Shown: positions 11,501 to 63,700 of the stretch, piece by piece
Position numbering within the stretch: position 1 is the stretch's first letter
Layout of the letters: each line of letters opens with the position of its first letter
Origin: Basidiobolus meristosporus CBS 931.73
Taxonomy: Eukaryota > Fungi > Basidiobolomycota
Direction: 5' to 3'
NCBI GenBank assembly: GCA_002104905.1
Contig: MCFE01000255.1
Span: 1 to 64,000 of the forward strand
Length of the DNA stretch: 64,000 nucleotides
Notes under the pieces: model-generated
What the model was told of the DNA's origin: nothing
Database searches by the model: none
Seen by the model: the letters and a program-made list of their open reading frames with translations, nothing else
Program-made: the position numbers and the translations under genes

Positions 11501-14500
11501 AAAGCGACGATATCTTGTTTACCTCTCCGAGATTCTCTATGGCTGCCTCGATGATCCGAAGAAGGTAGATAAGTATCGGATCCTCTTGCGTAGCCCCAAT
11601 GATGTTTAATTGTGAGCTTAATATACGAAGGGGATCAGCTCCAGCATGACTATGCTTCAGCAAGATGCGGATACAAAATGCCAGTTTGTTTACGACAGAA
11701 TCTTTCAGAAAATCCCTTTTCTCGGTATTGGCTAGGATGTCAATCAACACGCCGAGATCGTTGTGCGTTTGGTACTTCAATATGGTGGAATAGATTGGAT
11801 CGTCGCTGATATCCTGCTGGTAGGTAATCCTCAGTCGATCGAAATCGGCGTGCGTCAATTTGATATCGAGGAGATGATAAAATGAAAATATAGTTGTAAC
11901 TAGTTTCTTGGCATGCAAGTTGGAGCTGGAGTACGAGATTAAGGAGGGCAAAGCCCCGAGAAGATTAACAACTGCAACGATAGCCTATGTCAAATAGAGG
12001 TTACAGCTTAAATTACAACACAACCTGTAATGGATTTACGACTCTACCTGTCTTCCAACATTGAGGATACACATGTCATGCATTAATCTGATGAGTTGAT
12101 TTGCCTGTAGGTAATCGCCTTTGCTTATCAACACTGGTCTTTTGCCCTTCAAATCTGAATGTGCTACAAGCTGGGACACTAGACGAACAGCGTAGACTTG
12201 GTAGAGAAGCACAGTTACAAATTCCTCTACAGTAAACTGTAGCTTCCATCTTGAGTCACTGATCGATGTTGATTTGGGAATGTCAGTATGTTTAGAGTCA
12301 ACCGAGAAGCTTGGAGTTTCGGGAGTAGGTGAATACTCATGCTCATTGATCCACCCCCGACGATAATCCAAAATGCCAGGGCAGCCTTGAAGCTCTTGAC
12401 CATTAAACCAGCTGCACAGAAGATCACTAGGGTCAGGCCCGGGCTTTGTAAACGGGTCACCATTGGAAATCAGCGAATGAATCCAGACGCTGAATAGATG
12501 CTCGTTTCCTAGATCTGATCCCTCCAGCTCGTTCGAAAGATAAACAAGCCCTTGTTTCGTCTGCCACAGAGTTAAGCAAAGGTCGAAAAGACTTGGCAGG
12601 ATTTGCTCGCGCATAAGACGACTATGACTGTCACTAGAGACCAAGATATTGGTCACCAGCTTTATGATTTCATGAAAGCTAAGGTAGCGAAAATAGGATG
12701 CTTCCAAACTAAACTGTCTATCTTGTTCAAAACTTGCTGCATAAAACACTGCAGTGAGCTGCTGTACAGAATCGGTCAATCTCTTGATGGAACTGGGCTC
12801 AGCTGATATCGAATCCAAGGAGACATCGTGGGGAGTGTGATTGGAGGCTTGCCTGCTTTGATCGATGTCTTTCACAATACTGGATGCAACATCTCGAATA
12901 ACAGCACAATTTTCAAAAAACGCGATCTTCTCCACAATGTCCTTGGTCAGCTTCAAGGTTTTGGAAGGCAACTTCGATTCATAGATTAGCGGAGATATAT
13001 AAGTGCAGTAAAGTGACTCAGAAGCGGTCCTCTCATTGCCACCGGTGTACAATATATACTGAGCCACCAGTGGATTGTTCATGCATATCCCTGTTGCCTC
13101 GAGGATCTGAATTTTGAGATTCGTGCTAGCATTTGTGGAATGCAGTGGGTGCAACATGGTACGAATTAAGTTATGTTCCTTGGTTTAAATACGTGTTAGT
13201 ATGTGGTCAATAAGGGCCTTACACCTCGGATCTCACATATACTTACCAGAACCATCTTTGACAAGCCATCTTCGCACAAACAGAGCGTACAAATCAAATT
13301 TAGGCAGCACCGAAAGATAGGCAACGAAAACTGCAGGAAATGTTGGCGACGCTTCATACAATATTCCAAATGGAATCATACTTACTAAGCCTGAGGTAAT
13401 GCTCATCGAGTCGGATATCACATTCATCAAATTGGCAAGATCGTCTTCAATTGCAAGCATTGTTAGCATACTGTATGCTTAAATGGAAATCAAATCAACT
13501 CACCCTCAACTTGTACTCCATTCTTTCTGGCAAATATCAATGCGTCCTCTAGTAACTGATTGATTCGGTGAAGTAGCTGCTGGAGTAGCTTTGGTGGCTC
13601 ACTTCCTAGTGGTGAAGCGGTTGCACGTCGACGGGCGATCTCTGCTACCTCCGAAACCTGCTGCTTCAGCTCTATCCATGATTTTTGATGTGATCCCATC
13701 GCCGATGGATAGACTGGGTTTGTTGGTTTCTAGAATGAAATTACCACTCGGTTAGCTCACTAGACAAGATGTACTTGATGCACTTCAATAGACTCACAGG
13801 TTGGACTGAACTTGACGAGGCTTTTGAGTGAGCATTCCAGAGATTCTTCAGTGTTCCGTTTATTAGCGGATCAATGATACTTTGGTTGTGAAGCTTCTCG
13901 GTTAACGTAAGAATCTTTTTATGCAAGACTTGGGCTTCATTCAACTTGGATGCATGCAGCTTTAAGGGCTTGTAGCGACGAATAAGCTCGATAAATCCAC
14001 TTTCATCGTTTTCTAGTGCGTCAAAGTAAACGGGTTGGCTCGTGATTATACTCAAGGATTCGTAAGGGTATTTACCTAAAGCCACCGCACCGGAGCCTGT
14101 ATCTATCATCTGAAAAATTGGTCACATCTTCTGCTGGGAACAAAGCTTTCATGTTTACACGTACATTAACCAAGGAGTGAGGTTGGTTCGGCACGTAACC
14201 ATAAATACACAGCGTAAGAGCTTCAAATCTTCCTTTTACCAATAAAAAGCGCGTGGTAAACTTGAGGTAGAATTAGGAATACACGTTATGAAATATTGTA
14301 GAGCGTTGAGATCAATACCTCGAGCCCATAATCGAATTGACATCCCTGAATCCCAATGTCCTGCTCGTACTCAATGTCAAATGAATCAAGAGGCTGAATG
14401 TAGGATGTGTCTTCCCGAAAAATGGATAAACCACGCGTGTCCGTTGTTTTTTTGCACCGTACAGGTTTCTTGTGTATTAGTGTGTGAAAAGTAAAGCTAG

Positions 14501-16461: not shown

Positions 16462-19400
16462 TTAAATAAGCTTCAAGCCGATAGTAGAAGCACCGATTTG
16501 GGAGATTTCACAAACAGAACAGAGTTTCCCATTGTACTCGGGTTTGTATGATGCCTTACAATACGGGCATTGGGCTGCTGGGCTGTTTTGGTAGATTGGT
16601 GTGTAGGAGTGAGCACAAATGGTGAAGGAGTTGTATTGATCGTAGTCAATTGGGATTTCATCGCGAGATGTCTGGTCACTGATGGTCTGAACCTTGCGAG
16701 CCTGTTGATATAACCGTATGTTAGTTAACATTGCTAAAAAGACGTGTTATTTACCTAAACTATACCTGGGTGGCTATTTGAGGAGGTGGAGCGAGTTCCA
16801 GTAGACGGCGAGCAAACATCGACGCAGAAAGACAATTCTTGGTCTTGAAACTCAGAGTCATGGCCGATCTTAAGCTAAGTTGTGAGTGAATCGGTTCCAA
16901 TTCACAGTGTGTAAAGTAGGCTGCTAGCTCAAGAGCACGCTTCACGTTCTCGGGCTCATCCAAAGAGAGCTCACGCCTTTCTTTCTCCATTGTGAGGCCT
17001 AGAAGATATTCGCGGCAGAAGCCAATCATCTTTTTGATTTCTTCGGCTTCCGATGGTTCAGATACAACCACAAACGCAAGAGAATGCAACAATGAGCGGA
17101 AGAGCTCGATTGCTTCTGGGAATTTACCGGCCGAAGTAGCCTTGTATGCATCACGTAACAAAGCGAGCAAATATTCCATATTATAAATGACTATTGGATG
17201 AACTTTGGAAAGCTGTGTTTCTTCCTCATTGCGACGGACTGGGACAGAAACCGATGGAAGCGATGGATTACAGGATAGAGAGGTGCGGCTAGCCTGATAG
17301 ATGGTCAAGAATTGAGATTTGAGTGGGGCAAAGTTAATGGCCCCGATCTGAGTGTGCATTAACTCCATTGCACTATCAAATGATCCAGCGGCTACATGAT
17401 CTGCAACCAACTGGGAGTTTTTACACCACAACTCAAATTCACTAAGTCCCGAGGATGGCATTACAAACTCAGCGGGATTTCCGCCGTTCAGCAAGTCAGT
17501 AGCATCGGTATCAAGCGTAAGATCAGCATCAAGATCCCATCCAGAGCCCTCAACAATCTCGTCATACTCTCCAATGTGCAATTGCTCAGTAGAGCCTATA
17601 AGACCATCGTCGTCTCCCCAGCCGTCATTGGTCTCGCCAATCTCAACATTGGCATCCACTTGATCTGCATTTGCGAGGCTTGCGAAAGCACTTTCAAACG
17701 GACTCTTGGAGATGCTTAGCACGGGCCAATTGGTGTCGCTCTTATTTATGACAGGAACGGCTGGTTGAAGGAGTTTACCCGAAGGAGGTGTCTCGGTAAT
17801 GTCTTCAGGGGATAAGCCTGCACCAGCAAGGATTTGGTTGGCTTGCTCCTCCAGGCCGTGGGATTTAGCAGTAAGATACGCAAGAGGATCTGCATTACGC
17901 TGGATTAATACATATGATCCTGAGATAGCTTTTGCTGAGTAGACTTACACTGGTCAACTTCTATAAGCATCTGTATTCTCTCCTGAATATCCCCGAGATA
18001 CAACGCATTTTGGAAACGTGACATCTGATCATTACGGTGCTCGGCAATCTTCATCATTTTGGCCAATTTGTCAGTGTTGCCGGTAGCCAAGTAGAGGAAA
18101 GACAAACGGTCATAATTTTTGACACGTTGGTAAGCCATCTCTACAATCTGCTGATTACCATGCTTCAATGCCTCGTGGCTCAAGCGATTCCAGCATTCTT
18201 CTTTATCCAAAACTTTCGCCGTCTCCAGCGCAACATCGAGATTACCGCACTCCAATGCTAGCTCAAAGCGGGTACGTTCATCCTGAACAAAGTGTAGGGC
18301 AATCTGCGAAAACAAATAAGCAACCGAAGGATTTGTTTGGACATTGAGGGTTTATCTTACCTCTGGATAGCCGATCTTTTGCAAATAAGCAATTACTGAT
18401 TGCCCAACAAGGTTTGAATGCTTGATTACGTGAAGAACTTCATCGTAGTTCTTGTTGATGAGTGCAAGCTTGAATCGGTACTCGGTAGGATCAATGGTGG
18501 TGACACGAGGCTTCGCTTCACGATCCAAAGAGTAGATGTTCTTTCCTTTAGCTCTGGTCAAATACAAAGGATGCTCGATGCTTCGGATGATTCCATTGTC
18601 ACTGTGTGATGAAGAATTGGTTAGTCTAGGATGACAAGGCAAAAATCGAAAATTCTCGGTCGAACCCTTGAGGCAAGAGGTATTTGATATGATTCAAAGT
18701 GGTGTAAAGGAAAACACCAGTATCATCAAAGACACCACTCTTGATGCGGATCGTTTCATGCACTTGGCATTTCTGGGTCAGATCCTTATTTGCCAAGGTA
18801 ATGGCTAATTATGCACAGTGTTAGAAATGAACACAAAGAAATCGCAGAGTGACTTTGAATTCATACTATGCTTGTTCAATAAAGCGACGGTAGTCATATC
18901 AGTGGACCAGTAAACATATTTAATGGCCTCGACATTGATCTCGGACATCGTCTGACGCTGTTGCATATCATAAAGAATCACGCTGGTAGGAGTAGCCAAA
19001 AGAAGGTTGCCGCCAGGTGCGTGGAAGATATCGACTACTGTGGTGGGAGGAGTGATGGTCTTGGTGGTGGCATTAGAGAGATCTCTAATAGTGATGGTCT
19101 TTGGGTATATTAGAATCAGAAGGCCCACAAAAATACAACCCATTAATGGTTACCTGTGTGGACTTGTCCAGAACGGCAAACCGGTTACGAGCAATAAATA
19201 TGGCTGACGACCCATTGCCACGCTTGGGTTCAACTCTCATAGGCTCACCCCCAGAGCTGTCTTTAGGCAGATTGAACAACTCATAAACACTGTTATCATT
19301 GTTGATCTTCGTTGCAAACCAACGTTAGTGATGCACGTTACGAAATTTATCGAAAGAGAATTTACCGTGGTGATGAGCACTGCATGTTCGGCTGGGTTGT

Positions 19401-34353: not shown

Positions 34354-36466
34354 TTAAACACCGCCACCGCTTCGTTCTGTAGGGATTTTTCGGCTATATG
34401 CCATGTCAGGATGCGACTCATGGGGCCTGGCATCGATTGACGTATATTCCGCAGACAAGCCCATCGTCTTCAGAAATTCGAGGGCCTCCGCATACTCCTT
34501 TTGCTTACGTGCCTTGTCCCAGTTAAGTTCTTCAGACATTATCTCGATAACCTTAGGTAGGGCTTCCATCGCCGCATGCGCATTCAAGAAAGCCAATCTG
34601 GTCCGGCGAGCCAAGACATCAATTGCAGTGCAGGCGTATTCGTTACGAACGGCATATCTTACTTCGGCCTCTATATATGGATAAAGATTGCTCAGACGGG
34701 TTCCCACTTTCGGATAGACCTTGTTTGTTGATTCTGCTAGGGCTGCCACCCCCCATGCACGATCTCCATAGCTAGATGCCAAATGCCGGGCAACCTCAGT
34801 TTCTAGGCCGAAGTGTTGGATTAATTTGATGAACATCGTATTGGTATACAAATGTGATCCGATCAACTTGGTTGACTCTGTGCAGCAACTGTTCGTTGGT
34901 TGTAAATCAAAAACCTTAATTGCTCGATCAACAGTTTCCTCTGCCATGGCCCTATAGGTGGTCCATTTACCACCAGCAATGGTGATAAGGTTACTCCCAC
35001 TCACATTTATCATATGGTTACGTACAAGAGATGCTGTATTCTTGCTGGACGGATCTCGAACTAGTGGCCTGATTCCCGACCAAGCTGCAAGCACATCGCT
35101 CCGACGGACCTCTACATCTGGACTTAAATATCTTTTGACCTCGTCCAAAATCCAGGCAATCTCCTCCTCTTGCGCGAGTGGATTTGCAGTCACCTCGGTT
35201 TTTGAGTCGGTGGTGCCTGCAATAACATTCCCCTGCCATGGAAGGAAAAAAATTACTCTTCCATCCGTGGTGGCGGGGTCGAGAAGTCCCATGTTTTGCG
35301 GGCTATAGTAATTTGGAAGTATGATGTGGACACCGGCGCTTGGAGCAACGATTTCGGCTTGCTGAGGTTCATCCATCTGGCGGAGGCCATCAGTGAAAGG
35401 CCCAGTAGCATTGATAACCCCCTTGGCATGGATTGTCCACTCCTCTCCAGTAAGCGTGTCCCTAACCTTGGCTCCGGTAACAACCTCTTTATTGTTGTTT
35501 GCTATAGAGGGCTCTTTGTATAAACTCATGACCTCGACATGATTGGCTACGACGGCCCCATGTGTGACAGCTGTGAGTGCGATAGCAACGTTCATTCTTG
35601 AGTCGTTATGTTGGCCATCATAATAAACCAAGGCGCCAACCAAATTCTCCTCTTTCAACATGGGAAAAGCCTCCAATGCCTTGCTTTTACTTAAAACGTA
35701 GCTACTCTCCAACTTCTCCTTTCCAGCAAAGAGATCATAAAATTTGCATCCGACCCAGTAGTAAGGTAGCTGCCACCACCTAGCCATTCGACATCAGCAA
35801 AGGGAGCCTATATGGGGGAGAAAGTATCATGACATAACTTACTTGTAGACTGGCAGCATGATTGGGAGTTGATAGCTTAGATAAGGCGCGATCTTCAAGA
35901 ATGTAGCCCGCTCGTGCAAGGCCTCTGTCACAAGTTTGTACTGTTCATAGTCAAGCTCCATGAATGCCTTTTCGAGATAACGTACACCACCGTGAACCAA
36001 CTTGGTTGATCGTGACGAAGTGCCTAGATAAAAGCTGTTTAAGATACGACTCCTACCATGCATCACACTGGAAAAATCTACCTGATGCAAAATCATCCCG
36101 CTCAACCATGGCTACTTTGAGTCCTCTGGTAGCAGCGTCCAAGGCGATGCCAGCTCCGGTAGCTCCGCCGCCAACAATCAATAAATCAAAGGGCACCTCA
36201 TTTTGCACCATCTTTGGGCGTTCAGAGCCATCTTGTTGAAGCCCTTTTAACTGGTTAATCACTTGTTGTCGGCTGGGAGGAGACCAAAAAGTGTTAGGTC
36301 TGTTAGGGTCAACAGCAATAGTAGCGGGCGACTGTGCCTCGGCATGTGTCCGTGACAGCAAAGGCGCTCTTCCCCTTCTCTGATCAAAGTAGTAGTAGGA
36401 GGTAACGGCGCTGGTGGCTACAAGGGAGCTGTATAGATAGGGTCTGCTTTTGAGTTGCGTCCACAT
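34354..36466 (-). CDS. GUT2: Mitochondrial FAD-dependent glycerol-3-phosphate dehydrogenase (3 exons)
   Basis: [86 protein letters not shown]. Confidence 0.96.
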
Positions 36467-39878: not shown

Positions 39879-41132
39879 TTAAACAGTAGCAGCATTCGTG
39901 GAGGGTTGCTCAAGTCTATAGGGAACCTCAAGGTCACTGCCTTGAACCATCTCTGGCTCGAACTCAAAGTCAGGAGGCATGTTCTTAACAAAGCTCTCGA
40001 ACTGAAGATTCAAATGGGCGATTTCCGGGATGTTTTCAAGGCAGGAATCCTCACGAAACAGATGAAGGTACGTGTCGGTGCCATATCCCTCCATGGAAAC
40101 CACATTCAAATCACCGCCGAAGTAACGGGCAGTTAATCTAGCCAACGGTAAACCATGACCAAACCCTGAGAGAGGTCGACTTACATAATCATTTACCTCG
40201 CCACTTATTTGAACCGAGTCATCGCCCTTGGGTTCTGAATAAACGTAGCTCCAAAGACGGGACATCGCTGACATCGGAATACCACCGCCTTGATCCGAGA
40301 GCTTGAAGGACACGTCCTCTCCACCATTGGCCATGATTAATTTCAGAGGAGGTAAAGTCGTGTCTGCGTTGTGGAACTCGACGGTGGCGCGAAGAGAATT
40401 CTTCAGGATTTCGAACAATATCCGGTGCAGATGCTCCTCGATATACAATGTCTTGACTGACTCGAGCCCTCCGTATATCTTCACCTCTGGTGCCTCTATG
40501 CCGAAATGGGAAGCGCAGACTCGCCTGGCATCCGCGACGGCACGCTCTGCAATGGAAAGAGGAGAGATATTCCTTACAAGGTTCCGCCCCTTATCGTGTA
40601 GACTCAAGTGCTCTCCAATCAACAACCTCGTTCCGAAATTCAGAGTGTAGAAGGAATCGAAGAATGTACGGAACTTCTCGGCATGCAGTTCGCTCGGATT
40701 CAGCTGCTTCTCCTGCAGAAGCTCTCTGAATCCTTGCCCGACACTAAGGATGCTAGTGGTGTGCCGTTTCTGAATGTACTTCATAACTTTGGTGAAATCC
40801 TCGACTTGCTTTGCGGTTTTGGGTTTTGGGATTTGGGACAGAATACTGATGTCCTCGAGTAGGTTGTAGGTGATTTTACGAAAGGTTGGAAGGCCGCCCA
40901 TGCCATATGGGAGCTCGTGGGAACTCAGCATTTTGACACTCTGCGTAAGTCTGATGGGCAGCTCCTGGTGTAGGAATTGTGTAGGGATTAGGAGGGCAAA
41001 TGGATCTTTACGCTCCAGCAGTCGGCTACCGGAAGTGAACATCTGTTTTAGTGAGATCCTCGTGGCTTTGGACGAGGCGTACTTTAGAATGACATCCTTG
41101 GGCAGGGACTTTAGACAAGGGGTAGGAATCAT
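39879..41132 (-). CDS. Mitochondrial alpha-ketoacid dehydrogenase kinase (PDK/BCKDK family)
   Basis: FLHQELPIRL, ILFEILKNSLRAT (N box), DQGGGIP (G1), SGFGHGLPLARLTARYFGGDL (G2), GYGTDTYLHL. An upstream targeting-peptide exon may be missing. Confidence 0.9.
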   Translation of the reverse strand: MIPTPCLKSLPKDVILKYASSKATRISLKQMFTSGSRLLERKDPFALLIPTQFLHQELPIRLTQSVKMLSSHELPYGMGGLPTFRKITYNLLEDISILSQIPKPKTAKQVEDFTKVMKYIQKRHTTSILSVGQGFRELLQEKQLNPSELHAEKFRTFFDSFYTLNFGTRLLIGEHLSLHDKGRNLVRNISPLSIAERAVADARRVCASHFGIEAPEVKIYGGLESVKTLYIEEHLHRILFEILKNSLRATVEFHNADTTLPPLKLIMANGGEDVSFKLSDQGGGIPMSAMSRLWSYVYSEPKGDDSVQISGEVNDYVSRPLSGFGHGLPLARLTARYFGGDLNVVSMEGYGTDTYLHLFREDSCLENIPEIAHLNLQFESFVKNMPPDFEFEPEMVQGSDLEVPYRLEQPSTNAATV

Positions 41133-44537: not shown

Positions 44538-46255
44538 CTAAGCGTCCTGGGTGTCAACCACATCCTTGGTGCTTTGCTTTTGTTTGCGGTCACGCTGGTA
44601 GAACTCGGCAAGAGTCTTTTGGGGAATACGGTTGAGAAGCTCCTTCGGGAAGATACGGAGAAGGGACCAGGCATGGTCAAGAGACTCGAAAATGGTTCGG
44701 GACTCGTAGTGGCCTTGGGCGATGAAGGTCTTCTCGAATTTGTCCAAGAACTCCAACGAGAGCTTGTCCTCTTGATTCAACGCCTCCTCACCAACGACGG
44801 CCTTCATGGCAGCAGCATCACGGCCGATGGCATATTTGGCGTACAACTGGTTAGAGACATCACCGTGGTCCTTGCGGGTCATGCCTTCACCAATGGCCGA
44901 CTTCATCAAACGAGAGAGGGATGGCAAGACGTTGATGGGTGGGTAGATTTGGCGATTATGAAGTTGACGATCTACGTAGATTTGTCCCTCAGTAATGTAA
45001 CCGGTCAAATCGGGGATTGGATGGGTGATGTCATCGTTAGGCATGGTAAGAATGGGGATTTGTGTGATGGAGCCATTTCTGCCTTCCACACGACCTGCAC
45101 GCTCGTAGATGGTGGACAAATCGGTGTACATATAACCTGGGTAACCACGACGACCTGGCACCTCCTCTCTGGCGGCCGAGACCTCACGTAACGCATCAGC
45201 GTAGGAAGACATATCAGTCAAGATTACCAACACATGTTTCTCCAATTGGTAGGCATAGTACTCGGCAGTGGTCAATGCCAGTCTGGGAGTGATAATACGT
45301 TCGATGGTAGGATCGTTGGCAAGATTAAGGAAGAGAGTGACTCGTTCGATGGAGCCGTTCTCCTCGAAATCTTGCTTGAAGAAACGAGCGGTCTCCATGT
45401 TTACACCCATAGCGGCAAACACAATGGCGAAATTATCCTCGTGTCCGTCATGTACATCCTTGGTGGGCTTCTTCACCAAGCCAGCCTGTCTACAAATCTG
45501 GGCGGCAACCTCGTTGTGAGGCAAACCGGCAGCAGAGAAGATAGGGATCTTTTGGCCACGAGCAATAGAGTTCATGGTGTCAATGGCGGAGATACCGGTT
45601 TGGATCATTTCTTCGGGATAGATACGGGAGAATGGGTTGATGGGGGAGCCTTCGATATCGAGGAACTCCTCGGCGAACACCTTGGGGCCCTTATCGATGC
45701 TTTTACCCGAACCGTTGAAAATACGGCCCAACATATCTTCGGAGACGGGCATCTTGAGTGTATCTCCGGTGAACTCGACGTGTGTTGCACGAGCATCAAC
45801 ACCAGCTGTACCTTCGAATACCTATGGGTGGCTTCAATAAGTATACGTCATCGGGAGTTCAAGATGAACATTTGAAACCTACCTGAACCACGGCTCTTTT
45901 TCCTTGAACTTCTAGAACTTGCCCAGAGCGTTTAGTACCATCAGGTAGAGTAAGCTCGACGATTTCTGCGAATTTTGGGAACTTCATCCATGAAGGTCAG
46001 TCGCCAACGTACAACCAAGGGGGCAGTGGAGAAGAAAGATGAAGTACCTTCACGTTATCAAGGATGACCAGGGGGCCATTGACACCGGCAACCGTCCTGT
46101 AATCTAAAATCCAAGGTGCGGCGTTAACCACGGCTGCGAATTCGCCCAAACAGATGGTCCAAAAACCTACCCAAACGGGGTTGCAGACTGTAGTTTCTGG
46201 TGACTGCAGCGGCGTGAATAGAAGCGGCTTCTCTCTCGGTGATTCTTGGGTCCAT
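44538..46255 (-). CDS. VMA2: V-type ATPase subunit B
   Basis: [22 protein letters not shown].. start, [66 protein letters not shown]. Confidence 0.98.
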
Positions 46256-55200: not shown

Positions 55201-56260
55201 CCACTTCTGTGGTGCATTTTCGCCCAGGAAAACGCGACGACAACCTCATGATGGCAAAACAGGGGAGGGAGCCCGCTTCATCGTTGTCAATGGAAGAGTG
55301 CTTCATTCCCCACAAATGGCTGGATCCAAGACGCCCCAACCTGTATACATGCCGCTTACCAATAGTCAGCTACGGATAGCAGTCACTTGTGCTTATACTT
55401 GCACCCCAGCAGCAAGGACGCCTTGTGTTTCATCAACATCACGGTTGGACGGCATCTGTCTGAGGAGTAGAGGCACAGTCTGTTGCATCCATTCGTACCT
55501 GACTCGTGCGTACAACTCCCTGACAGCGGGTGACAGATGTGGGCCGCTCAAGGAACCATTTCTTAAGCGTGGTGATCCAGTGCTCAAATCCGTTATCAGC
55601 GCACTCAGATTCGGATTGCCGGTCATATATGGATATATGGTTTTGAAATTCAATCCAATTCGAGAAACCTATGAGCAGCCAGGGTTGTCGTACACGTATT
55701 ATTTAAATCTGTCGGGCCCCGCCGATTTTTTTGATTGGCTACCTTCGGACAAACAAATCCTGGCCTCGTATGACGTAAGTGCCGGGCAGGCACCTATCCG
55801 CTTGATTTAGGAGCACCCCAGCGAATTGCAAGTATCAGACGGATGCTGAGTTCAGAAAGAAAAGGCTCAGCAGTGGGACTGCAGAACACAGGAGTAACCC
55901 AAGGTGCCGTTATTGCAGTTGTCAAGCATCGATGTATAGCTGATCAGCTCGATAGGAGTCGGGTGGCATGAGGTTTCGATAGCCACAAACCCATTCGCCA
56001 ATCACGGGTCAGTTGACCACTAGCGAATGCTGAGACGAGATCATTGGTGCACGATAGTAGCCAAATAAGGGCATTCATTTTCCTCCTATTCATGTTGAGC
56101 CTGGATTCACTGGCATAAATAGACGGGGCTGCCGGTATCCTTCCGCACATATTTTTGCCCATTACATCCACCACCGCTGATTGCTATTCACTGCGCAGAC
56201 CCCTTACGCAGCGCCATCCAATAACTCCATCCTCGCACCGAACTTTGCCCTCTAAATAAG

Positions 56261-57508
56261 ATGTCCAGCTCCAACGCCGGTAAATGCCCTTACAGTGGAC
56301 ACTCCAAACCCGCCGCTGATTCCAGCGAGGCCTCCAAATGCCCCCTAGCCGGCAAATGCCCATACTACGACCAGGTGAAGAATGATCCTGCCCACCATTT
56401 GACCTCCGACCACGGAGAGTGCCCAGTCAAGGGGAAATGCCCATACTACGATGTCGTCAAGGAAGGTCACGACAAAGGCGAAGGGAAATGCCCCTTCCTT
56501 GAGCACATGCAGGGCATGAGTTTGAATGAGGCCCACGAAGCCGGAAAGTGCCCTCTCGCCGGTAAATGCCCATATTATGACCAAGTCAAGAAGGATCCCG
56601 CTCATCACTTGACCGGCAGCCATGGCGAGTGTCCCGTAAAGGGCAAATGTCCATACTACGACCAAGTCAAGCAAAAGGAGGGCATGGATACTGCCCATTC
56701 TTCCAAGTGCCCCCTTGCTGGTAAATGCCCATACTACAATCAGGTCAAAAATGATCCTGCACATCACTTGACCGCTGAGCATGGTCAATGCCCAGTGAAA
56801 GGAAAATGCCCGTACTACGACGAGGTCAAGGAGGGTCATGAGGCAGGAGAAGGCAAATGCCCTTTCCTCGAACGCATGCAGGGTATGGGTGTCCATGAGG
56901 CCCATGAGTCCGGCAAATGCCCACTTGCTGGAAAGTGCCCATACTACGATCAGGTTAAGAAGGATCCCGCCCATCATTTAGCCGGGGAGCACGGCGAGTG
57001 CCCAGTCAAAGGAAAGTGCCCCTACTACGATCAGGTTAAGCAAAAGAGCGTTTCTGAGGCCGAGCACAAATCGAAGTGCCCTCTTGCTGGAAAATGCCCT
57101 TACTACGACCAAGTGAAGCAGGATCCTTCTCACCACTTGACTGGCGAACACGGAGAGTGTCCTGTCAAGGGCAAGTGTCCGTACTACGATGTTGTTAAGG
57201 AGGGTCATCATACGGGGGAAGGAAAATGTCCTTTTGTTGAACACATGAAGGGTCATGGAAGTGGCGAAGCGCATGAGGCTGGAAAGTGCCCACTAGCTGG
57301 CAAGTGCCCCTACTACGACCAAGTCAAGAGTGACCCTTCACACCATCTCACCGGGGAGCATGGTGAATGCCCAGTCAAGGGTAAATGCCCATACTACGAT
57401 GAAGTCAAGGAAAAGAGCACAGCTGAGGAAAGTTCATCAGCCCTACCCGAGGGCCATCCTCCAGTACCTGGTAGTACGACCGGAGGCAAGTGCCCATTTT
57501 CCAAGTGA
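56261..57508 (+). CDS. Intronless Cys-Pro/His-rich tandem-repeat protein (29 CP motifs), candidate heme- or metal-binding protein
   Basis: 415-aa ORF with six copies of KCPLAGKCPYYxxVKxDPxHHLxxxHGxCPVKGKCPYY in three 123-aa higher-order blocks. Amino acids are near-invariant while codons differ synonymously. Confidence 0.9.
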   Translation: MSSSNAGKCPYSGHSKPAADSSEASKCPLAGKCPYYDQVKNDPAHHLTSDHGECPVKGKCPYYDVVKEGHDKGEGKCPFLEHMQGMSLNEAHEAGKCPLAGKCPYYDQVKKDPAHHLTGSHGECPVKGKCPYYDQVKQKEGMDTAHSSKCPLAGKCPYYNQVKNDPAHHLTAEHGQCPVKGKCPYYDEVKEGHEAGEGKCPFLERMQGMGVHEAHESGKCPLAGKCPYYDQVKKDPAHHLAGEHGECPVKGKCPYYDQVKQKSVSEAEHKSKCPLAGKCPYYDQVKQDPSHHLTGEHGECPVKGKCPYYDVVKEGHHTGEGKCPFVEHMKGHGSGEAHEAGKCPLAGKCPYYDQVKSDPSHHLTGEHGECPVKGKCPYYDEVKEKSTAEESSSALPEGHPPVPGSTTGGKCPFSK

Positions 57509-58405
57509 GTCCAGGTGTCGGGGATTCTGAAATTTATATATAAATGTATACCTACGAGCCATATGATCCCCCTACCCGCTTTGGGGATTGCTTGTGTGAA
57601 AAGAATGCCACCCACAGTAGTAGAATTTGTTAAATAAAGTAAATCCATCCACGACGTTTATTACATCACTACCACTGTCAGCATCATCATTCATTCCTAC
57701 ACTCGCACCGTCATCACGCTTGAGCCTAGTCAATGCTGACTTGGGCACTTTTAATTGCTCTTTGAATGTCCTCAATGAATCATGCTAATTGAGGTCAGTT
57801 TAACAGTCGGCCATACCCAATGCACTTGTGCTAGATATCAAGTCGACCAATCCCCATTCTCCCACTAAGCTTGGGGCCTCGTGGGATTTGCTAGAAACAT
57901 CGAGTCACTTCCAGTAGTTTCGTAAATTCGAAAAGCCACTGCGTATTGGAAATTCCAAGATTGGATCTTCCCTGAACGGTTTTGCAGGACGCACCACTTC
58001 TCAATGCCATCTCGTGGTCGAATTCCACTTCACTTTGAAGAATGCCGCTAGCTATCCTGTATATACCACCCAGGGATGGTATATTGTTGTAAATCTTTGA
58101 GACATTGGAAGCTACTGGGAGATCCTGTAGATCATGTGATTTTCACTTCACAACTGACTGAATGTAAAAGTGGCATCTCTACCTTTACTAGGTTTTGGCA
58201 AAGCAAACACATAATATATGCTCAGGGAGGTCTCAAGAACACATGTGCAAAACCTGGGGGCCTTTGAATTATTATGGGAACTGTCATGCTCTATACTTGG
58301 TATTTCTGGTAGTAACTCTATAAGTAAATCCCATTATGGGTAGAGCATTGTAAAGCTTGTATACTTTGCTCCAGGTGGGAAAAGCAATGGAATACTTAGG
58401 CTTAG

Positions 58406-60721: not shown

Positions 60722-63700
60722 CATTAGACTGGTGCTTCAAATAGAGAGATAATCAGCAAAAGTAGCCAGAATATGGAAATGCTGCAACAACTGAAGATAG
60801 ACTATTCATATCTGCCCTAACTATGACCACAGACAAGGATTCTCAGATGTGGTACATTGGCTCTGGAGCATCTCAACACCTTACACACCAGAAAGAACAT
60901 TCTACTCAATATCAAGAAGTTCCAATTAAGAAGGTTTTCATGGGTGACAATAGAACACTTGATGCAGTGGGAGAAAGAACTATCCAAGTAAGCCTTAGAA
61001 GCATTGATGGAAGCCATACACTTTCCTTCAAAGAAGTACTCTATGTACCAGAAATGGCTAAGAGCCTACTATCTGTAACCAAGGTCACTTCTGAAGGACT
61101 CAGTCTCAGCTTTGACAATTCTGGATGCAGGGTTGCTGGTCAAAATGGTGTCCATATTGCTTTAGGTATCAGAGATCAGAATCTATACAAGTTGATATAT
61201 ATTCCATTGTATCTGGAAGCCAATATAAGTAACTTAAATGAAGAAACACCAATGCTTTGGCACAGGAGATTTGGATGCATTAATTTTGATTATTTGTGCA
61301 AAATGATCCAAGATCAGCTAATATCCAGAATGAAAATTGATCCCCCAGCTAATGTGAAGCACTGTAAAGCCTACATATTTGGGAAAAAAGCCAGACAACT
61401 GTTCAGGAGCTCTGGATTAATCAAAGCTAAAAAAATTAGATCTCAGATTTGTGTGGACCTATGTAAAATATACCCTTAGGTGGGATGAAGTATTTAATCA
61501 CTTTTATTGACAATTATACAAGAAACATGTGGGTCTACTTCATGGAGAGAAAGGAAGCAGCTATGTCTAAGCTCAGGGAGCTTAAAGCCATGGTGGAGGG
61601 AGAAACCAGTGAGAAAATCAAGAAAATATGCTCCAACAATTGTAGAAAATATACCTCAAAACTCTTCATCCACATCTGCAAAACCTGTGGGATAAAGTAA
61701 GAGACTACTGTACCACACTCCCCACAGCAAAATGGAGTAGCAGAACATGCAAACAGATCAATAATTGATATGGGAAGATCCATGATCCATTATCAAAAAC
61801 TATCCTCTCATTTTTGGGCAGAATATTTGCCATAGCTGTATACCTTATATATGAGTTATAACAGAATAATTTGTGATTCTACTCCACTTGAGTCATGATA
61901 TGGATACAGACAAAGTGCAGCATCTTAGAATATTTGAGTAAACAGCATATGCCAAGAAACTACCTGAAAATCAGTTACAACATGAGCTAAAAAGTGTAAA
62001 ATTGATATTTTTGGGCTACTGCAATGAGAGTAGCAAATACAGACTCTACAACACTAAAGCAAAGAAGCTGATTAAGTCCAGGGATGTGCTGTCTGATGAA
62101 AATTCAGATTTTCCACAAAAAATGACATCAGATGATGACAAAAATGTGATCTTAAGTCCACCAATTATCAGGATTGAATCTGAATAAAACAATGAAATCT
62201 TTCTCACTCCAGAGTACTCTAAAGCTGTGGTTCAGCCTGAATTAGTGCCCAAGAATATCCCAGAAGTGATCAATCCAGTATCAAATGCCAGGAGATCCAA
62301 CAAGTCAAGAAATAGCCCAAATTACTATATCAATGAGTGTACAAACTTAGCCAATGACTATTCAGTCAATATTGATGAGCCCAGACTGTAAAAGAGACCC
62401 TAATTAGCCCACAGACAAAGTTTGGGAGATCTGCAATGACTGAGGAATATCAGGCCCTGATGGAAAATCAAACTTGAGACTAAGTCAAATTACCAATTGA
62501 CCAAAAATCAATTGGATGGAGGTGGGTCCTTAAGACAAAATACAAGGCTGATGGTACAACTGAAAGATACAAAGCAAGACTTGTAGACAATGGATAACCT
62601 CAAGCCACAGGACTTGACTATACTGCAACCTTTGCACTGGTAACCAAGTTTAATTCCACCAGATTAATATTGGCTATTGCAGCCAATCATAGGTTGTTTA
62701 TTCATCAAATGGATGCAAAATCTGCATTTTTTAATAGGGAACTTGCTGAAGACATGTATATGAACCAGCCTGATGGGTTTGCTGACTAAGATAACACCTA
62801 TCTGGTCTGCAAGCTTTAAAAATCTCTATATGGACTCAAACAATCACCAAGAGCATGGAGTTGTAAGAAAATTCTTATTTGGAATCTTTGAGTTACTAGA
62901 GGAGTAATCCTGACTATAGTATAAAGTATTAGTTGGATGGAGGAAGTCCAGTTATATTTGTTCTCTATGTGGATGATGATACAATAACTGCCAATAACAT
63001 TGAAACATTGGAAGTGACTAAATCCAGCCTATCTAAGGAGTTCAAGATGTCCAATCTAGAAGAATTAAATTATTACTTAGAGTGATAACCTGAGTACTTC
63101 TGTCTATGGAGGGCTTTATCCCTAAGCCAATCCAAATATATTCAAGATATACAAAGAAGTACAAAATGACCAATTCTAAACTGACAGCTACCCCTATAGA
63201 GACAAACCTTAACTTGGTCAATACTCAACCAAATCAAGTGAGCTTGGTGCCATCTGAAAGCCCTAACTTTCTTTATCAATTGATAGTTGTCAGCTTGATG
63301 AGTATTGTGCTTGAAACACATCCAGATATCTCATATTCAGTGGAAGTAGTCAGTTAGCATAAGCAGAACTATGGATATGACTATATTGCAGCAGTTGAGC
63401 AGATTACCTAAAAGGAATTGCTAATATCTGCTTAAGGCACACCTAAAAAGAATTACAACAAGGTTCTATTGGATACTCTGATGCTGATTGGGGAAGAAAT
63501 TTGGAAGACAGAAGATCCACCACAGGATACACCTTGATTTACTGCAAAGGGTCATTTCATGTAATTCAAGAAAGCAACCAACCATAGTACTCTCTACAAC
63601 AGAGGCAGTGTATATGGCAGCCTGTGAAATCACAAAAGAAGCAATGTGGATAAGAAAGCTTTTACAGATTTAGGCCTATGTCAAAAAACGCCTATTACTT

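What the first reader, a model, noticed from the sequence alone, without database searches (positions are those of the whole stretch)
56261..57508. A protein made almost entirely of heme-regulatory-like Cys-Pro motifs and His clusters: candidate heme or metal sponge
Seen: 415 aa, no intron, no signal peptide. All 29 cysteines lie in a (K/E/Q)CP(Y/L/V/F) context, with about 33 His, many as HHLxxxHG. It has six CPLAGKCPYY-x-HH-x-H-x-CPVKGKCPYY units, three GKCPF linkers and a terminal PEGHPPVPG...GKCPF. Known: Cys-Pro dipeptides are the heme regulatory motifs of yeast Hap1 (KCPVDH), ALAS, heme oxygenase-2, Bach1 and holocytochrome c synthase N-termini, where a few copies sit beside a catalytic or DNA-binding domain. 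Here there is no other domain. Classical metallothioneins use CxC/CC clusters and avoid aromatics, unlike this Tyr-Tyr-rich repeat. Inference: a cytosolic multi-heme buffer, store or sensor (Cys/His axial pairs), or an unrecognised Zn/Cu/Fe chelator family.
Basis: partly seen in the sequence, partly recalled or inferred. Interest (0 to 1): 0.88.

Follow-up and report, generated by a model that had tools for sequence, protein, structure and literature searches.

The report
Cys-Pro pair repeat protein, Basidiobolus
A fungus (Basidiobolus) makes a real, conserved and probably well-expressed cytosolic protein built only of paired Cys-Pro motifs and histidines; it belongs to an undescribed family whose other members sit in the endoplasmic reticulum or form the lumenal head of ZIP7/YKE4 zinc transporters, so it most likely buffers a metal such as zinc, with heme binding as the main alternative.

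Summary
ORF 56261-57508 (+) encodes 415 aa with 29 Cys, all followed by Pro, and 33 His. It has six 42-aa units, three GKCPF linkers and a PEGHPP...GKCPF tail.

The gene is real:
- A 1,458-nt public contig covers exactly 56201-57653. It reads as an unspliced mRNA ending 15 nt after an AATAAA signal.
- A ~89%-identical relative has no indel in the ORF but five in the 3' UTR.
- dN/dS against Basidiobolus ranarum is about 0.06.
- The six units keep 34 of 42 residues although their synonymous sites are fully randomised.

It is not an exon of a known enzyme. There is no credible Pfam or PDB match, and AlphaFold gives pLDDT about 50.

A search of 1.84 billion proteins found about 50 relatives, all uncharacterised, from chytrids, Glomeromycotina and Basidiobolus. 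Nearly all carry a signal peptide and an HDEL-type end, so they are ER-lumenal. The same domain forms the lumenal N-terminus of YKE4/ZIP7-type zinc transporters in at least three lineages. The Cys always come as C-x5/6-C pairs.

My reading:
- Thiolate/imidazole metal (probably Zn) buffer relocated to the cytosol: about 45%.
- Multi-heme binder: about 25%.
- Redox role: about 12%.

The scan noted the same stretch once before (s1-199483) and other unchecked Cys-Pro proteins in this genome.

The parts
56114..56122 (+). TATA-like element CATAAATAG, about 80 nt upstream of the first base of the presumed mRNA contig
   Evidence: Sequence read. Its role as a promoter element is inferred.
56201..56260 (+). 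5' UTR of the presumed mRNA. It has no upstream ATG and holds an in-frame stop.
   Evidence: The X3 contig starts at 56201. Sequence and upstream translation.
56261..57508 (+). Intronless coding sequence of 415 aa plus stop, the Cys-Pro pair repeat protein
   Evidence: Purifying selection. No indel in the ORF against a ~89%-identical relative.
56336..56461 (+). Unit 1 (aa 26-67): CPLAGKCPYY-x15-CPVKGKCPYY core with HH..H
56462..56545 (+). Linker 1 (aa 68-95) with the single GEGKCPFLEHMQGM motif
   Evidence: Sub-threshold match to HMBD (PF19335).
56546..56671 (+). Unit 2 (aa 96-137)
56705..56830 (+). Unit 3 (aa 149-190)
56831..56914 (+). Linker 2 (aa 191-218) with GEGKCPFLERMQGM
56915..57040 (+). 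Unit 4 (aa 219-260)
57074..57199 (+). Unit 5 (aa 272-313)
57200..57283 (+). Linker 3 (aa 314-341) with GEGKCPFVEHMKGH
57284..57409 (+). Unit 6 (aa 342-383)
57410..57505 (+). C-terminal tail ...LPEGHPPVPGSTTGGKCPFSK. It is conserved in B. ranarum (LPEGHPPVSEGTTGTGCPFAK) and has no HDEL-type signal.
   Evidence: Sub-threshold match to Preseq_ALAS (14 bits).
57509..57653 (+). 3' UTR of the presumed mRNA. AATAAA lies at 57633-57638, 15 nt before the contig end.
   Evidence: All five indels against the ~89%-identical relative fall at 57532-57580.

Best explanation
The gene encodes an intrinsically disordered cytosolic protein that buffers or stores a metal, most likely Zn(II); other soft metals such as Cu(I), Cd or Ni are not excluded.

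Proposed ligands. The ligands would be the thiolates of the paired Cys-Pro motifs (C-x5-C ... C-x5-C, four Cys per 42-aa unit) and the invariant histidines (HH...H in each unit, plus the His/Met-rich GKCPF linkers). With 29 Cys and 33 His the protein could hold roughly 6-15 metal ions. It would fold only around the metal, as metallothioneins do.

Proposed origin. It derives from an older ~140-aa domain made of Cys-Pro pairs. In early-diverging fungi that domain works in the ER lumen, either as a soluble HDEL-retained protein or as the lumenal N-terminal head of the YKE4/ZIP7 zinc exporter. In Basidiobolus the domain lost its signal peptide and HDEL, gained conserved histidines and was multiplied.

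Shown:
- The gene, its selection and its probable transcript.
- The family and the targeting signals of the relatives.
- The fusions to ZIP transporters.
- The strict Cys pairing.
- The lack of a predicted autonomous fold.

Inferred: metal binding itself, the identity of the metal, the stoichiometry and the buffering role.
For: 1. The gene is real and constrained.
- A public contig covers exactly 56201-57653 with no differences, at depth 2022, with nothing on the flanks. AATAAA lies 15 nt before its end.
- The 0.81 share of words held by that run equals the fraction of the queried stretch that the transcript occupies.
- pN 0.146 against pS 0.732, omega about 0.06, over 150 codons against B. 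ranarum.
- Synonymous codons among the six units are random (0.50 identical against 0.47 under the null), while 34 of 42 residues are invariant, including all Cys, Pro, YY and three His.

2. Fusion to a zinc transporter.
- P0020 is a single 709-aa ORF: signal peptide, Cys-Pro domain, then a Pfam Zip domain (E 1.3e-59). Its nearest named relatives are 'SLC39 member 7 / Zn(2+) transporter YKE4'.
- The window protein hits P0020 at E 4.9e-16.
- The N-domain of P0020 alone hits the chytrid HDEL proteins at E 2e-40.
- The Saitoella ZIP proteins P0060/P0064 and the ENA protein P0146 carry the same N-domain (E 3e-31 to P0020).
- 92 of 120 fungal YKE4/ZIP7 orthologues keep at least one Cys-Pro in the lumenal N-terminus. 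In Mortierellomycotina it sits next to a His cluster.
- N-terminal ectodomains of LIV-1-type ZIPs are His-rich, and the His-rich loop of ZIP4 binds zinc (PMC7949119).

3. Cys come in pairs. C-C spacing in 55 family members peaks sharply at 6 (260 cases) and 7 (76 cases). A chelating pair suits a metal or a disulfide. It does not suit heme, where each iron takes one thiolate.

4. No autonomous fold. pLDDT is 0.40 in the ESM Atlas. AlphaFold2 gives 52.9 (34-row alignment) and 50.0 (60-row alignment). This is as expected for a fold that depends on a ligand.

5. Weak extras. A sub-threshold match of the linker to Pfam HMBD, the heavy-metal-binding domain (16.1 bits). The UniRef automatic name 'C3H1-type domain-containing protein' for the Batrachochytrium member.

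6. Precedent. A transporter ectodomain also exists as a soluble protein in the Chlamydomonas CTRA domain and CTR3 (bioRxiv 10.1101/2023.10.19.563170).
Against: - No metal binding was measured, and the fusion argument is guilt by association.
- It is homology to the N-domain of a transporter, not evidence about this cytosolic protein itself.
- Cys-Pro with a following hydrophobic residue is the textbook heme-regulatory motif. The protein scores 20.8 bits on Pfam Preseq_ALAS against a cut-off of 21, and the tail alone scores 14 bits.
- C-x5-C is not a known zinc-knuckle spacing. AlphaFold usually recognises Zn ribbons, and here it predicted only short helices starting at each CPYY.
- Cys content (7%) is far below that of metallothioneins, and Tyr is abundant.
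- In the oxidising ER lumen the ancestral Cys pairs might simply form disulfides.
- No metal-responsive promoter element was found, although the scan used motifs from distant fungi.
- No RNA run was listed. The transcript evidence rests on a run labelled 'DNA?' that I read as RNA.
Confidence: 0.45

Rival explanations
1. Multi-heme buffer, store or sensor. Each Cys-Pro acts as a heme-regulatory motif whose thiolate ligates Fe(III)-heme. The nearby His or Tyr supply a sixth ligand. The protein would soak up labile cytosolic heme; the ER relatives would chaperone heme in the lumen.
For: - All 29 Cys are K/E/Q-C-P-hydrophobic, which fits the heme-regulatory motif.
- The review PMC10377097 reports that the Cys-Pro motif favours thiolate-heme coordination, lies in flexible loops, and can pass heme on to a nearby His.
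- Pfam Preseq_ALAS scores 20.8 bits against a cut-off of 21. The tail LPEGHP...KCPF scores 14 bits on profile positions 52-84.
- The nearest ESM Atlas feature clusters are ascomycete ~150-aa proteins, of which 15-22% carry Preseq_ALAS (score 0.70, a lead only).
- Predicted disorder suits transient heme binding.
- Unchecked first-reader notes report Cys-Pro motifs on a truncated haemoglobin and on a P450 in this genome, and a follow-up agent's note describes a three-domain heme oxygenase.
Against: - The defining family feature is a pair of Cys six or seven residues apart. One heme iron takes one thiolate, and two hemes on adjacent Cys-Pro motifs would clash.
- The domain is fused to zinc transporters, not to any heme protein.
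- Most relatives live in the oxidising ER lumen. In HO-2 the heme-regulatory motifs form a thiol/disulfide switch that responds to the cellular redox state (PMC2742820, title and abstract), so lumenal Cys pairs may well be oxidised.
- Residues before the Cys-Pro are Gly-Lys, not the aliphatic residues seen in about 87% of heme-binding Cys-Pro motifs (PMC10377097).
- All Pfam heme-related scores are below threshold.
Confidence: 0.25
2. Thiol-redox protein. The C-x5-C pairs cycle between dithiol and disulfide. In the ER the family would act as a redox buffer or as a partner of oxidative folding. In Basidiobolus the cytosolic copy would be a sacrificial or regenerable scavenger of oxidants and electrophiles.
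For: - Cys pairing is strict.
- Relatives reside in the ER lumen.
- Each CPYY or CPHF begins a short predicted helix. From my own knowledge, this resembles the helix-N-cap position of the reactive Cys in CPYC (glutaredoxin) and CPHC (DsbA) active sites.
- The HO-2 Cys-Pro motifs form a thiol/disulfide switch (PMC2742820).
Against: - There is no thioredoxin fold or any other predicted fold.
- The invariant His triplets of the Basidiobolus units and the ZIP fusions are not explained by this reading.
- A cytosolic protein would stay reduced.
- No partner enzyme is indicated.
Confidence: 0.12
3. A conserved repeat protein whose Cys-Pro pairs serve protein-protein or structural contacts, for example a scaffold or chaperone-like factor, with no small-ligand binding.
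For: No ligand has been shown. The protein is disordered, Lys- and Tyr-rich and repetitive. The family is too poorly known to exclude this reading.
Against: Selection on every Cys, Pro and His across saturated synonymous divergence is best explained by chemistry at those side chains. So is the recurrence of the domain on a metal transporter.
Confidence: 0.08

Closest known systems
Lumenal N-terminal domain of fungal YKE4/ZIP7 (SLC39A7, LIV-1/KE4 subfamily) zinc transporters, in the expanded form seen in P0020, Saitoella P0060/P0064 and P0146
   Same: Homologous Cys-Pro pair domain. E-values: 4.9e-16 from the window protein to P0020, 2e-40 from the P0020 N-domain to the chytrid proteins, and 3e-31 between the two ZIP N-domains. 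The sub-motifs come in the same order: CPLxxKCPYY..VKxGK, CPVxxxCPHF, GDxSKCP(H/Y)F.
   Different: The window protein has no transporter, no signal peptide and no membrane anchor. It has six near-identical units with invariant His triplets. The zinc-binding role of the ZIP N-domain is itself only inferred by analogy with the His-rich ectodomains of animal ZIPs (PMC7949119).
Soluble ER-lumenal Cys-Pro pair proteins of Chytridiomycota and Glomeromycotina, for example Batrachochytrium dendrobatidis BATDEDRAFT_24269, Rhizoclosmatium globosum BCR33DRAFT_779128 and Quaeritorhiza KAJ3091548. All are annotated 'hypothetical'.
   Same: Same family, 30-47% identity. Cys-Pro makes up 88% of all Cys and the C-x5/6-C pairing is the same. 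There is no Pfam domain and no predicted fold.
   Different: They carry a signal peptide and an HDEL, KDEL, RDEL or TDEL end. Their ~144-aa super-repeat has five pairs plus one single Cys-Pro and no invariant His.
Heme regulatory motifs (Cys-Pro) of ALAS1, HO-2, Hap1, Bach1 and holocytochrome c synthase
   Same: A Cys-Pro dipeptide followed by a hydrophobic residue, in a flexible region (PMC10377097). Near-threshold Pfam Preseq_ALAS score.
   Different: Those proteins have one to seven irregularly spaced motifs beside a catalytic or DNA-binding domain. Here there are 29 motifs, mostly in fixed C-x5-C pairs, and no other domain. The relatives are lumenal or fused to a transporter. No homology was detected.
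Metallothioneins and His/Cys-rich metal storage proteins such as Hpn of Helicobacter (from my own knowledge)
   Same: Proposed mode of action: a disordered apo-protein, many thiolate and imidazole ligands, a high ligand-to-length ratio and probably high expression.
   Different: There are no CxC, CC or CxxC clusters. Cys is only 7%, and the protein is rich in Tyr and Lys. At 45 kDa it is much larger than the small classical metallothioneins. There is no sequence relationship.
CTRA domain of Chlamydomonas CTR1/CTR2 copper transporters and the soluble CTR3 (bioRxiv 10.1101/2023.10.19.563170)
   Same: The same evolutionary pattern. A Cys-rich ectodomain of a metal transporter also occurs as a stand-alone soluble protein made of repeated copies. 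Both have roots in chytrids.
   Different: The transporter family differs (CTR against ZIP), the metal differs, and the sequences are unrelated. CTR3 is secreted, whereas the window protein is cytosolic.

Membership tests
Cys-Pro pair domain family (undescribed; chytrid HDEL proteins and ZIP7/YKE4 N-domains) | Significant sequence similarity to family members over several units | tested here: met
   E-values from 1.7e-52 to 1e-12 for 26 proteins. A profile of the window super-repeat finds 179 domain hits in the family set.
Cys-Pro pair domain family (undescribed; chytrid HDEL proteins and ZIP7/YKE4 N-domains) | Cys almost always followed by Pro and arranged in C-x5/6-C pairs followed by aromatic residues | tested here: met
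   Window protein: 29 of 29 Cys are Cys-Pro, with 12 pairs. Family: 767 of 869 Cys are Cys-Pro, with spacing peaks at 6 and 7.
Cys-Pro pair domain family (undescribed; chytrid HDEL proteins and ZIP7/YKE4 N-domains) | Secretory-pathway location (signal peptide plus xDEL, or a lumenal transporter head) | tested here: not met
   The window protein has a hydrophilic N-terminus, an in-frame stop upstream within the transcript, and ends in ...CPFSK. It is a relocated, cytosolic branch of the family.
Heme-regulatory-motif (HRM) proteins | Cys-Pro dipeptide followed by a hydrophobic residue in a flexible segment | tested here: met
Heme-regulatory-motif (HRM) proteins | Reversible Fe(III)-heme binding through the Cys thiolate (Soret band near 370 nm) | not testable with these tools
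   Needs spectroscopy of recombinant protein.
Heme-regulatory-motif (HRM) proteins | Motifs regulate an attached catalytic, DNA-binding or targeting domain | tested here: not met
   No other domain was found by Pfam or PDB searches.
Pfam PF09029 Preseq_ALAS | Score at or above the gathering threshold (21 bits) | tested here: not met
   20.8 bits for the whole protein and 14 bits for the tail alone.
Pfam PF04248 DUF427 (NTP_transf_9) | Match to the full 93-position domain | tested here: not met
   The total of 41 bits comes from 7 stretches that each cover only profile positions 44-65, the CPxKGxxxYY hairpin motif. None of the chytrid relatives matches.
Classical metallothioneins | Small size, 15-30% Cys in CxC, CC or CxxC clusters, and few aromatic or His residues | tested here: not met
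   415 aa, 7% Cys, no CxC, CC or CxxC, 6% Tyr and 8% His.
Zinc ribbon, rubredoxin-knuckle or CCCH zinc fingers | CxxC knuckles or C-x8-C-x5-C-x3-H spacing, and a confidently predicted small fold | tested here: not met
   The spacing is C-x5-C-x20-C-x5-C. AlphaFold2 pLDDT is 50-53 with no strands. No PDB sequence hit. The UniRef 'C3H1-type' label on the Batrachochytrium member is automatic.
Pfam PF19335 HMBD (heavy-metal-binding domain) | Score at or above the gathering threshold (23.6 bits) | tested here: not met
   16.1 bits, E 0.011, for the linker segment.

The most novel reading that the evidence does not exclude
Early-diverging fungi possess a dedicated, previously unrecognised metal-handling module, the Cys-Pro pair domain.
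- As a soluble HDEL protein it would be the ER's zinc store, a 'calsequestrin for zinc'.
- As the lumenal head of YKE4/ZIP7 it would hand that zinc to the exporter.
- In Basidiobolus it was moved to the cytosol and multiplied, and there it replaces metallothionein.

Alternatively, the same module could be the first natural poly-HRM heme sponge.
Probability: 0.3. Interest if true: 0.8.

Novelty: new variant of a known kind. Interest (0 to 1): 0.62.

Why it matters
It is still poorly understood how zinc, or heme, is held inside the ER lumen and handed to the ZIP7/YKE4 exporter.

This family offers a concrete candidate. It would be a lumenal, HDEL-retained ligand-binding protein built from the same module as the transporter's own head. 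Its members include proteins of the amphibian pathogen Batrachochytrium and the potato-wart fungus Synchytrium. The Basidiobolus protein is the easiest member to test, because it is cytosolic, intronless and probably abundant.

If it binds metal, it defines a new class of metallothionein-like proteins that use Cys-Pro pairs. It would also show that 'heme regulatory motif' look-alikes cannot be read as heme sites by sequence alone. If it binds heme, it would be the first protein made solely of such motifs.

Either way the domain deserves a family entry, since it has no Pfam model.

Tried and rejected
1. An exon of a known enzyme or a known family: rejected.
- Pfam gives only motif-level or sub-threshold hits.
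- PDB sequence and profile searches find nothing.
- The mRNA-like contig holds only this ORF.

2. DUF427 membership: rejected. Only 22 of the 93 profile positions match, repeated seven times, and the match is absent from relatives.

3. A hidden signal peptide on an upstream exon: rejected. There is an in-frame stop upstream inside the contig, the contig is collinear with the genome, and there is no upstream ATG.

4. Recent repeat expansion or gene conversion as the reason the units are identical: rejected. Synonymous sites are randomised.

5. An excess of synonymous divergence: rejected. pS of 0.83-0.87 looked higher than saturation, but the codon-shuffle control shows no excess (0.50 against 0.47).

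6. Structure-based function assignment: abandoned. Both AlphaFold2 jobs gave pLDDT of about 50, so fold searches would be meaningless and were not run.

7. Promoter scan for Zap1, Ace1, Mac1, Aft1, SreA, Hap1, Yap1 and MTF-1 type elements in 55401-56260: nothing informative.

8. RNA runs: none was listed, after two busy errors.

10. Literature: no paper mentions CPYY as a protein motif or BATDEDRAFT_24269. Searches for Basidiobolus plus heme and for HDEL, cysteine-rich, zinc and chytrid gave nothing on this family.
Full report
**1. Observation**

The ORF at 56261-57508 (+) is exactly as described.
- It encodes 415 aa.
- It has 29 Cys, every one in the context (K/E/Q)-C-P-(Y/L/V/F).
- It has 33 His, 25 Tyr and 51 Lys.

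The protein is built of six 42-aa units: K-CPLAGKCPYY-.QVK.DP.HHL...HG.-CPVKGKCPYYD.VK. In these units 34 of 42 columns are invariant.
- Long units carry a GEGKCPF(L/V)E.M linker and alternate with short units.
- This makes three 123-aa super-repeats. Tandem Repeats Finder reports period 369 nt, 2.9 copies, 75% match.
- The tail is LPEGHPPVPGSTTGGKCPFSK.
- Twenty-four Cys form twelve C-x5-C pairs and five stand alone.

**2. Is it a gene?**

Four independent lines say yes.

(a) Probable transcript.
- In a public run of the same study, one contig of 1,458 nt covers exactly 56201-57653. It has no differences and a word depth of 2022. The flanks have zero depth.
- The run holds 0.81 of the words of the 1,801-nt query. 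That is the fraction the contig occupies.
- An AATAAA signal lies at 57633-57638, 15 nt before the contig end.
- A TATA-like CATAAATAG lies about 80 nt before its start.
- The run is labelled 'DNA?' by the tool. I read it as RNA-derived for these reasons. This is an inference, and no RNA run was listed.
- The contig is collinear with the genome, so there is no intron.
- It contains no upstream ATG and it holds an in-frame stop before the ATG, so there is no hidden signal peptide.

(b) Frame conservation. A 32-kb contig from a relative about 89% identical is collinear over the whole ORF without a single indel. Five indels fall in 50 nt of the 3' UTR, and the 5' UTR is replaced.

(c) Orthologue in Basidiobolus ranarum.
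- The B. ranarum protein KAK9708196 is annotated as 77 aa. In fact it is cut by the contig start.
- The reading frame runs to base 1 of the contig with the same order of units and the same tail.
- Over 150 aligned codons pN is 0.146 and pS is 0.732, giving omega of about 0.06.

(d) Old repeats under selection.
- Within the gene, the three super-repeats are only 71-75% identical in DNA but 78-83% identical in protein.
- At identical residues the six units use the same codon no more often than chance: 0.50 against a null of 0.47 ± 0.02.
- The repeats are therefore old, and each unit is individually held by selection. That includes every Cys, every Pro, the Tyr-Tyr pairs and three His.

**3. Organism**

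The closest public protein is from Basidiobolus ranarum. An earlier follow-up note of this scan names the genome Basidiobolus meristosporus (s1-202191). I did not verify the species itself.

**4. What family?**

No known family fits.
- Pfam gives a DUF427 score that comes from seven matches to 22 of 93 profile positions, the CPxKGxxxYY hairpin.
- Pfam also gives Preseq_ALAS at 20.8 bits against a cut-off of 21.
- No PDB sequence matches the protein or a 60-row family profile.

An exhaustive HMMER pass over 1.84 billion representatives found only 53 proteins at E ≤ 1e-3, three of them spurious. The word-indexed search found 13. Those from named organisms are annotated 'hypothetical' or carry only automatic labels. 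The named sources are:
- Chytridiomycota: Chytriomyces, Rhizoclosmatium, Quaeritorhiza, Clydaea, Kappamyces, Batrachochytrium, Synchytrium, Chytridium, Globomyces, Nowakowskiella, Borealophlyctis and others.
- Glomeromycotina: Ambispora.
- Basidiobolus.

Family features:
- The unit is a ~144-aa super-repeat of five CPx4-5CP(Y/H)(Y/F) pairs plus one single CP(Y/H). I found 58 copies.
- Of 869 Cys, 767 are Cys-Pro. The C-C spacing peaks at 6 (260 cases) and 7 (76 cases).
- Nearly every full-length member has an N-terminal signal peptide and ends in HDEL, KDEL, RDEL, TDEL, HEEL or similar. They are soluble residents of the ER lumen.
- The window protein and its B. ranarum orthologue are the exception. 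Neither has an HDEL-type end, and the window protein has no signal peptide; the B. ranarum N-terminus is cut by the contig start.

**5. The functional clue: fusion to zinc transporters**

P0020 is a single uninterrupted 709-aa ORF.
- It consists of a signal peptide, a Cys-Pro pair domain and a ZIP transporter (Pfam Zip, E 1.3e-59).
- The nearest named relatives of its ZIP part are 'SLC39 member 7', 'Zn(2+) transporter YKE4' and 'KE4' of Glomeromycotina and Mortierellomycotina, at 55-59% identity.
- The window protein matches P0020 at E 4.9e-16.
- The N-domain of P0020 alone matches the chytrid HDEL proteins at E 2e-40.

The same architecture occurs elsewhere.
- It is found in Saitoella (Taphrinomycotina; P0060/P0064) and in an ENA protein (P0146).
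- The Saitoella N-domain aligns to that of P0020 at E 3e-31, with sub-motifs in the same order. These include a CP(V/I)(I/V)Q(E/N)LN element just before the first membrane helix.
- Among 120 fungal YKE4/ZIP7 orthologues, 92 keep at least one Cys-Pro in the short lumenal N-terminus. In Mortierellomycotina it sits beside a His cluster (...HKGHHAH...DHVHANVDP..GDCPFH).

The N-terminal ectodomains of LIV-1-type ZIPs are His-rich, and the His-rich loop of ZIP4 binds zinc (PMC7949119).

So the Cys-Pro pair domain occurs in the same compartment in two forms: as part of a zinc exporter and as a free protein. The CTRA domain of the Chlamydomonas copper transporters and the soluble CTR3 show the same pattern for copper (bioRxiv 10.1101/2023.10.19.563170).

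**6. Mechanism I think most likely (about 45%)**

The domain is a thiolate-based metal-binding module, and zinc is the best guess.
- In Basidiobolus it lost its targeting signals.
- It gained three invariant His per unit and His/Met-rich linkers.
- It was multiplied into a 45-kDa cytosolic buffer or store.
- It would be disordered when empty: pLDDT is 0.40 in the ESM Atlas, and 52.9 and 50.0 with AlphaFold2 on 34- and 60-row alignments. It would fold around metal.
- Four Cys per unit suggest one Cys4 site per unit. His and the linker Cys may add more.

The pairing of Cys is the strongest internal argument. A fixed C-x5/6-C pair is a chelate or a disulfide. It is not two independent heme ligands.

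Everything about binding is inference, and nothing was measured.

**7. Rivals**

Heme (about 25%).
- The motifs fit the heme-regulatory consensus.
- Cys-Pro peptides bind Fe(III)-heme through the thiolate and can pass it to a nearby His (PMC10377097).
- The Pfam ALAS-presequence scores are just under threshold.
- Other unchecked notes report Cys-Pro motifs on heme proteins of this genome.
- Against it: the Cys pairing, the ZIP fusions, the oxidising home of the relatives (the HO-2 motifs form a redox-responsive thiol/disulfide switch, PMC2742820), and the Gly-Lys rather than aliphatic residues before Cys-Pro.

Thiol-redox role (about 12%).
- It fits the pairs and the ER location.
- It also fits the short helices that AlphaFold starts at each CPYY. 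These recall the CPYC and CPHC active sites, which is my own knowledge.
- It leaves the His and the ZIP fusions unexplained.

Pure scaffold (about 8%). This cannot be excluded.

The motif libraries give a draw. The linker scores 16.1 bits on the heavy-metal-binding domain HMBD, and the tail scores 14 bits on Preseq_ALAS. Both are sub-threshold.

**8. Novelty**

The family has no Pfam model, no solved structure and no paper that I could find. In function it is probably a new variant of a known kind, namely Cys/His-rich metal- or heme-buffering proteins, rather than a new principle.

Three things are new:
- the Cys-Pro pair module itself;
- its three settings: ER-soluble, transporter head and cytosolic;
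- the warning that a protein saturated with 'heme regulatory motifs' may not be a heme protein.

**9. Limits**

- The transcript evidence depends on my reading of one run.
- The full list of differences to the ~89%-identical relative was truncated by the tool, so no dN/dS was computed for it.
- Paralogues in the same genome are indicated by short high-depth contigs and by earlier notes, but I could not fetch them.
- The organism of P0020 is unknown (Logan run SRR13106155).

Noticed in passing
L001:1-462 (Basidiobolus ranarum JASJQH010007501.1): The public annotation KAK9708196 (77 aa, starting MKVGHETG...) is an artefact of the contig start. The reading frame is open from base 1 and continues the repeat (CPHYDQVK...KCPLAGKCPYY...). 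The true B. ranarum protein is therefore longer, and its N-terminus is unknown.
   Followed up: yes
P0066-P0183 (fungal YKE4/ZIP7 orthologues): 92 of 120 carry at least one Cys-Pro in the lumenal N-terminus. Mortierellomycotina have a His cluster followed by GDCPFH. Glomeromycotina have CPY(I/V)(Q/R)EL just before the first membrane helix, which recalls the CPALLY motif said to be absent from the KE4 branch.
   Followed up: partly
window 56825-56866, 57002-57042, 57363-57400 (short contigs of runs X1, X3 and X4): Short high-depth contigs with 4-12 mismatches encode related CPYY and ECPVK pieces. One of them, in the RNA-like run, has depth 233. This indicates expressed paralogues elsewhere in the genome. 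It agrees with unchecked first-reader notes of a ~63-motif Cys-Pro protein and of Cys-Pro repeats fused to other domains.
   Followed up: no
window 56345-56977 and 56978-57274, minus strand: Long antisense ORFs (210 and 98 aa) run through the repeat. Their translations are low-complexity V/L/A/G strings that mirror the sense codons. They are by-products of the sense strand, not genes.
   Followed up: partly
window 9492-11951 and 12036-13157, minus strand: Two large ORFs (819 and 373 aa) have no Pfam match at E ≤ 1e-3.
   Followed up: no
window 16760-17722, 34354-35787, 39879-41132, 44538-45752 (all minus strand): Ordinary housekeeping exons: coatomer alpha C-terminus, FAD-dependent glycerol-3-phosphate dehydrogenase (DAO plus DAO_C), a mitochondrial PDK/BCKDK-type kinase, and an ATP synthase or V-ATPase alpha/beta-family subunit.
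   Followed up: partly
window 60823-61479 (+): A copia-type retroelement fragment (Pol_BBD plus gag_pre-integrase domains) lies 3 kb downstream of the gene.
   Followed up: no
P0012 (Blyttiomyces) and P0018 (Kappamyces): The Cys-Pro domain with an HEEL or HDEL end appears behind an RRM plus Gly-rich region in P0012 and behind a Ulp1 protease domain in P0018. A cytosolic or nuclear domain in front of an ER-retained one suggests merged gene models rather than true fusions.
   Followed up: no
P0184 (Batrachochytrium dendrobatidis BATDEDRAFT_24269): UniRef automatically names this single-domain, KTEL-ended family member 'C3H1-type domain-containing protein'. An automatic zinc-finger profile seems to have picked up the Cys-Pro pairs.
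   Followed up: no
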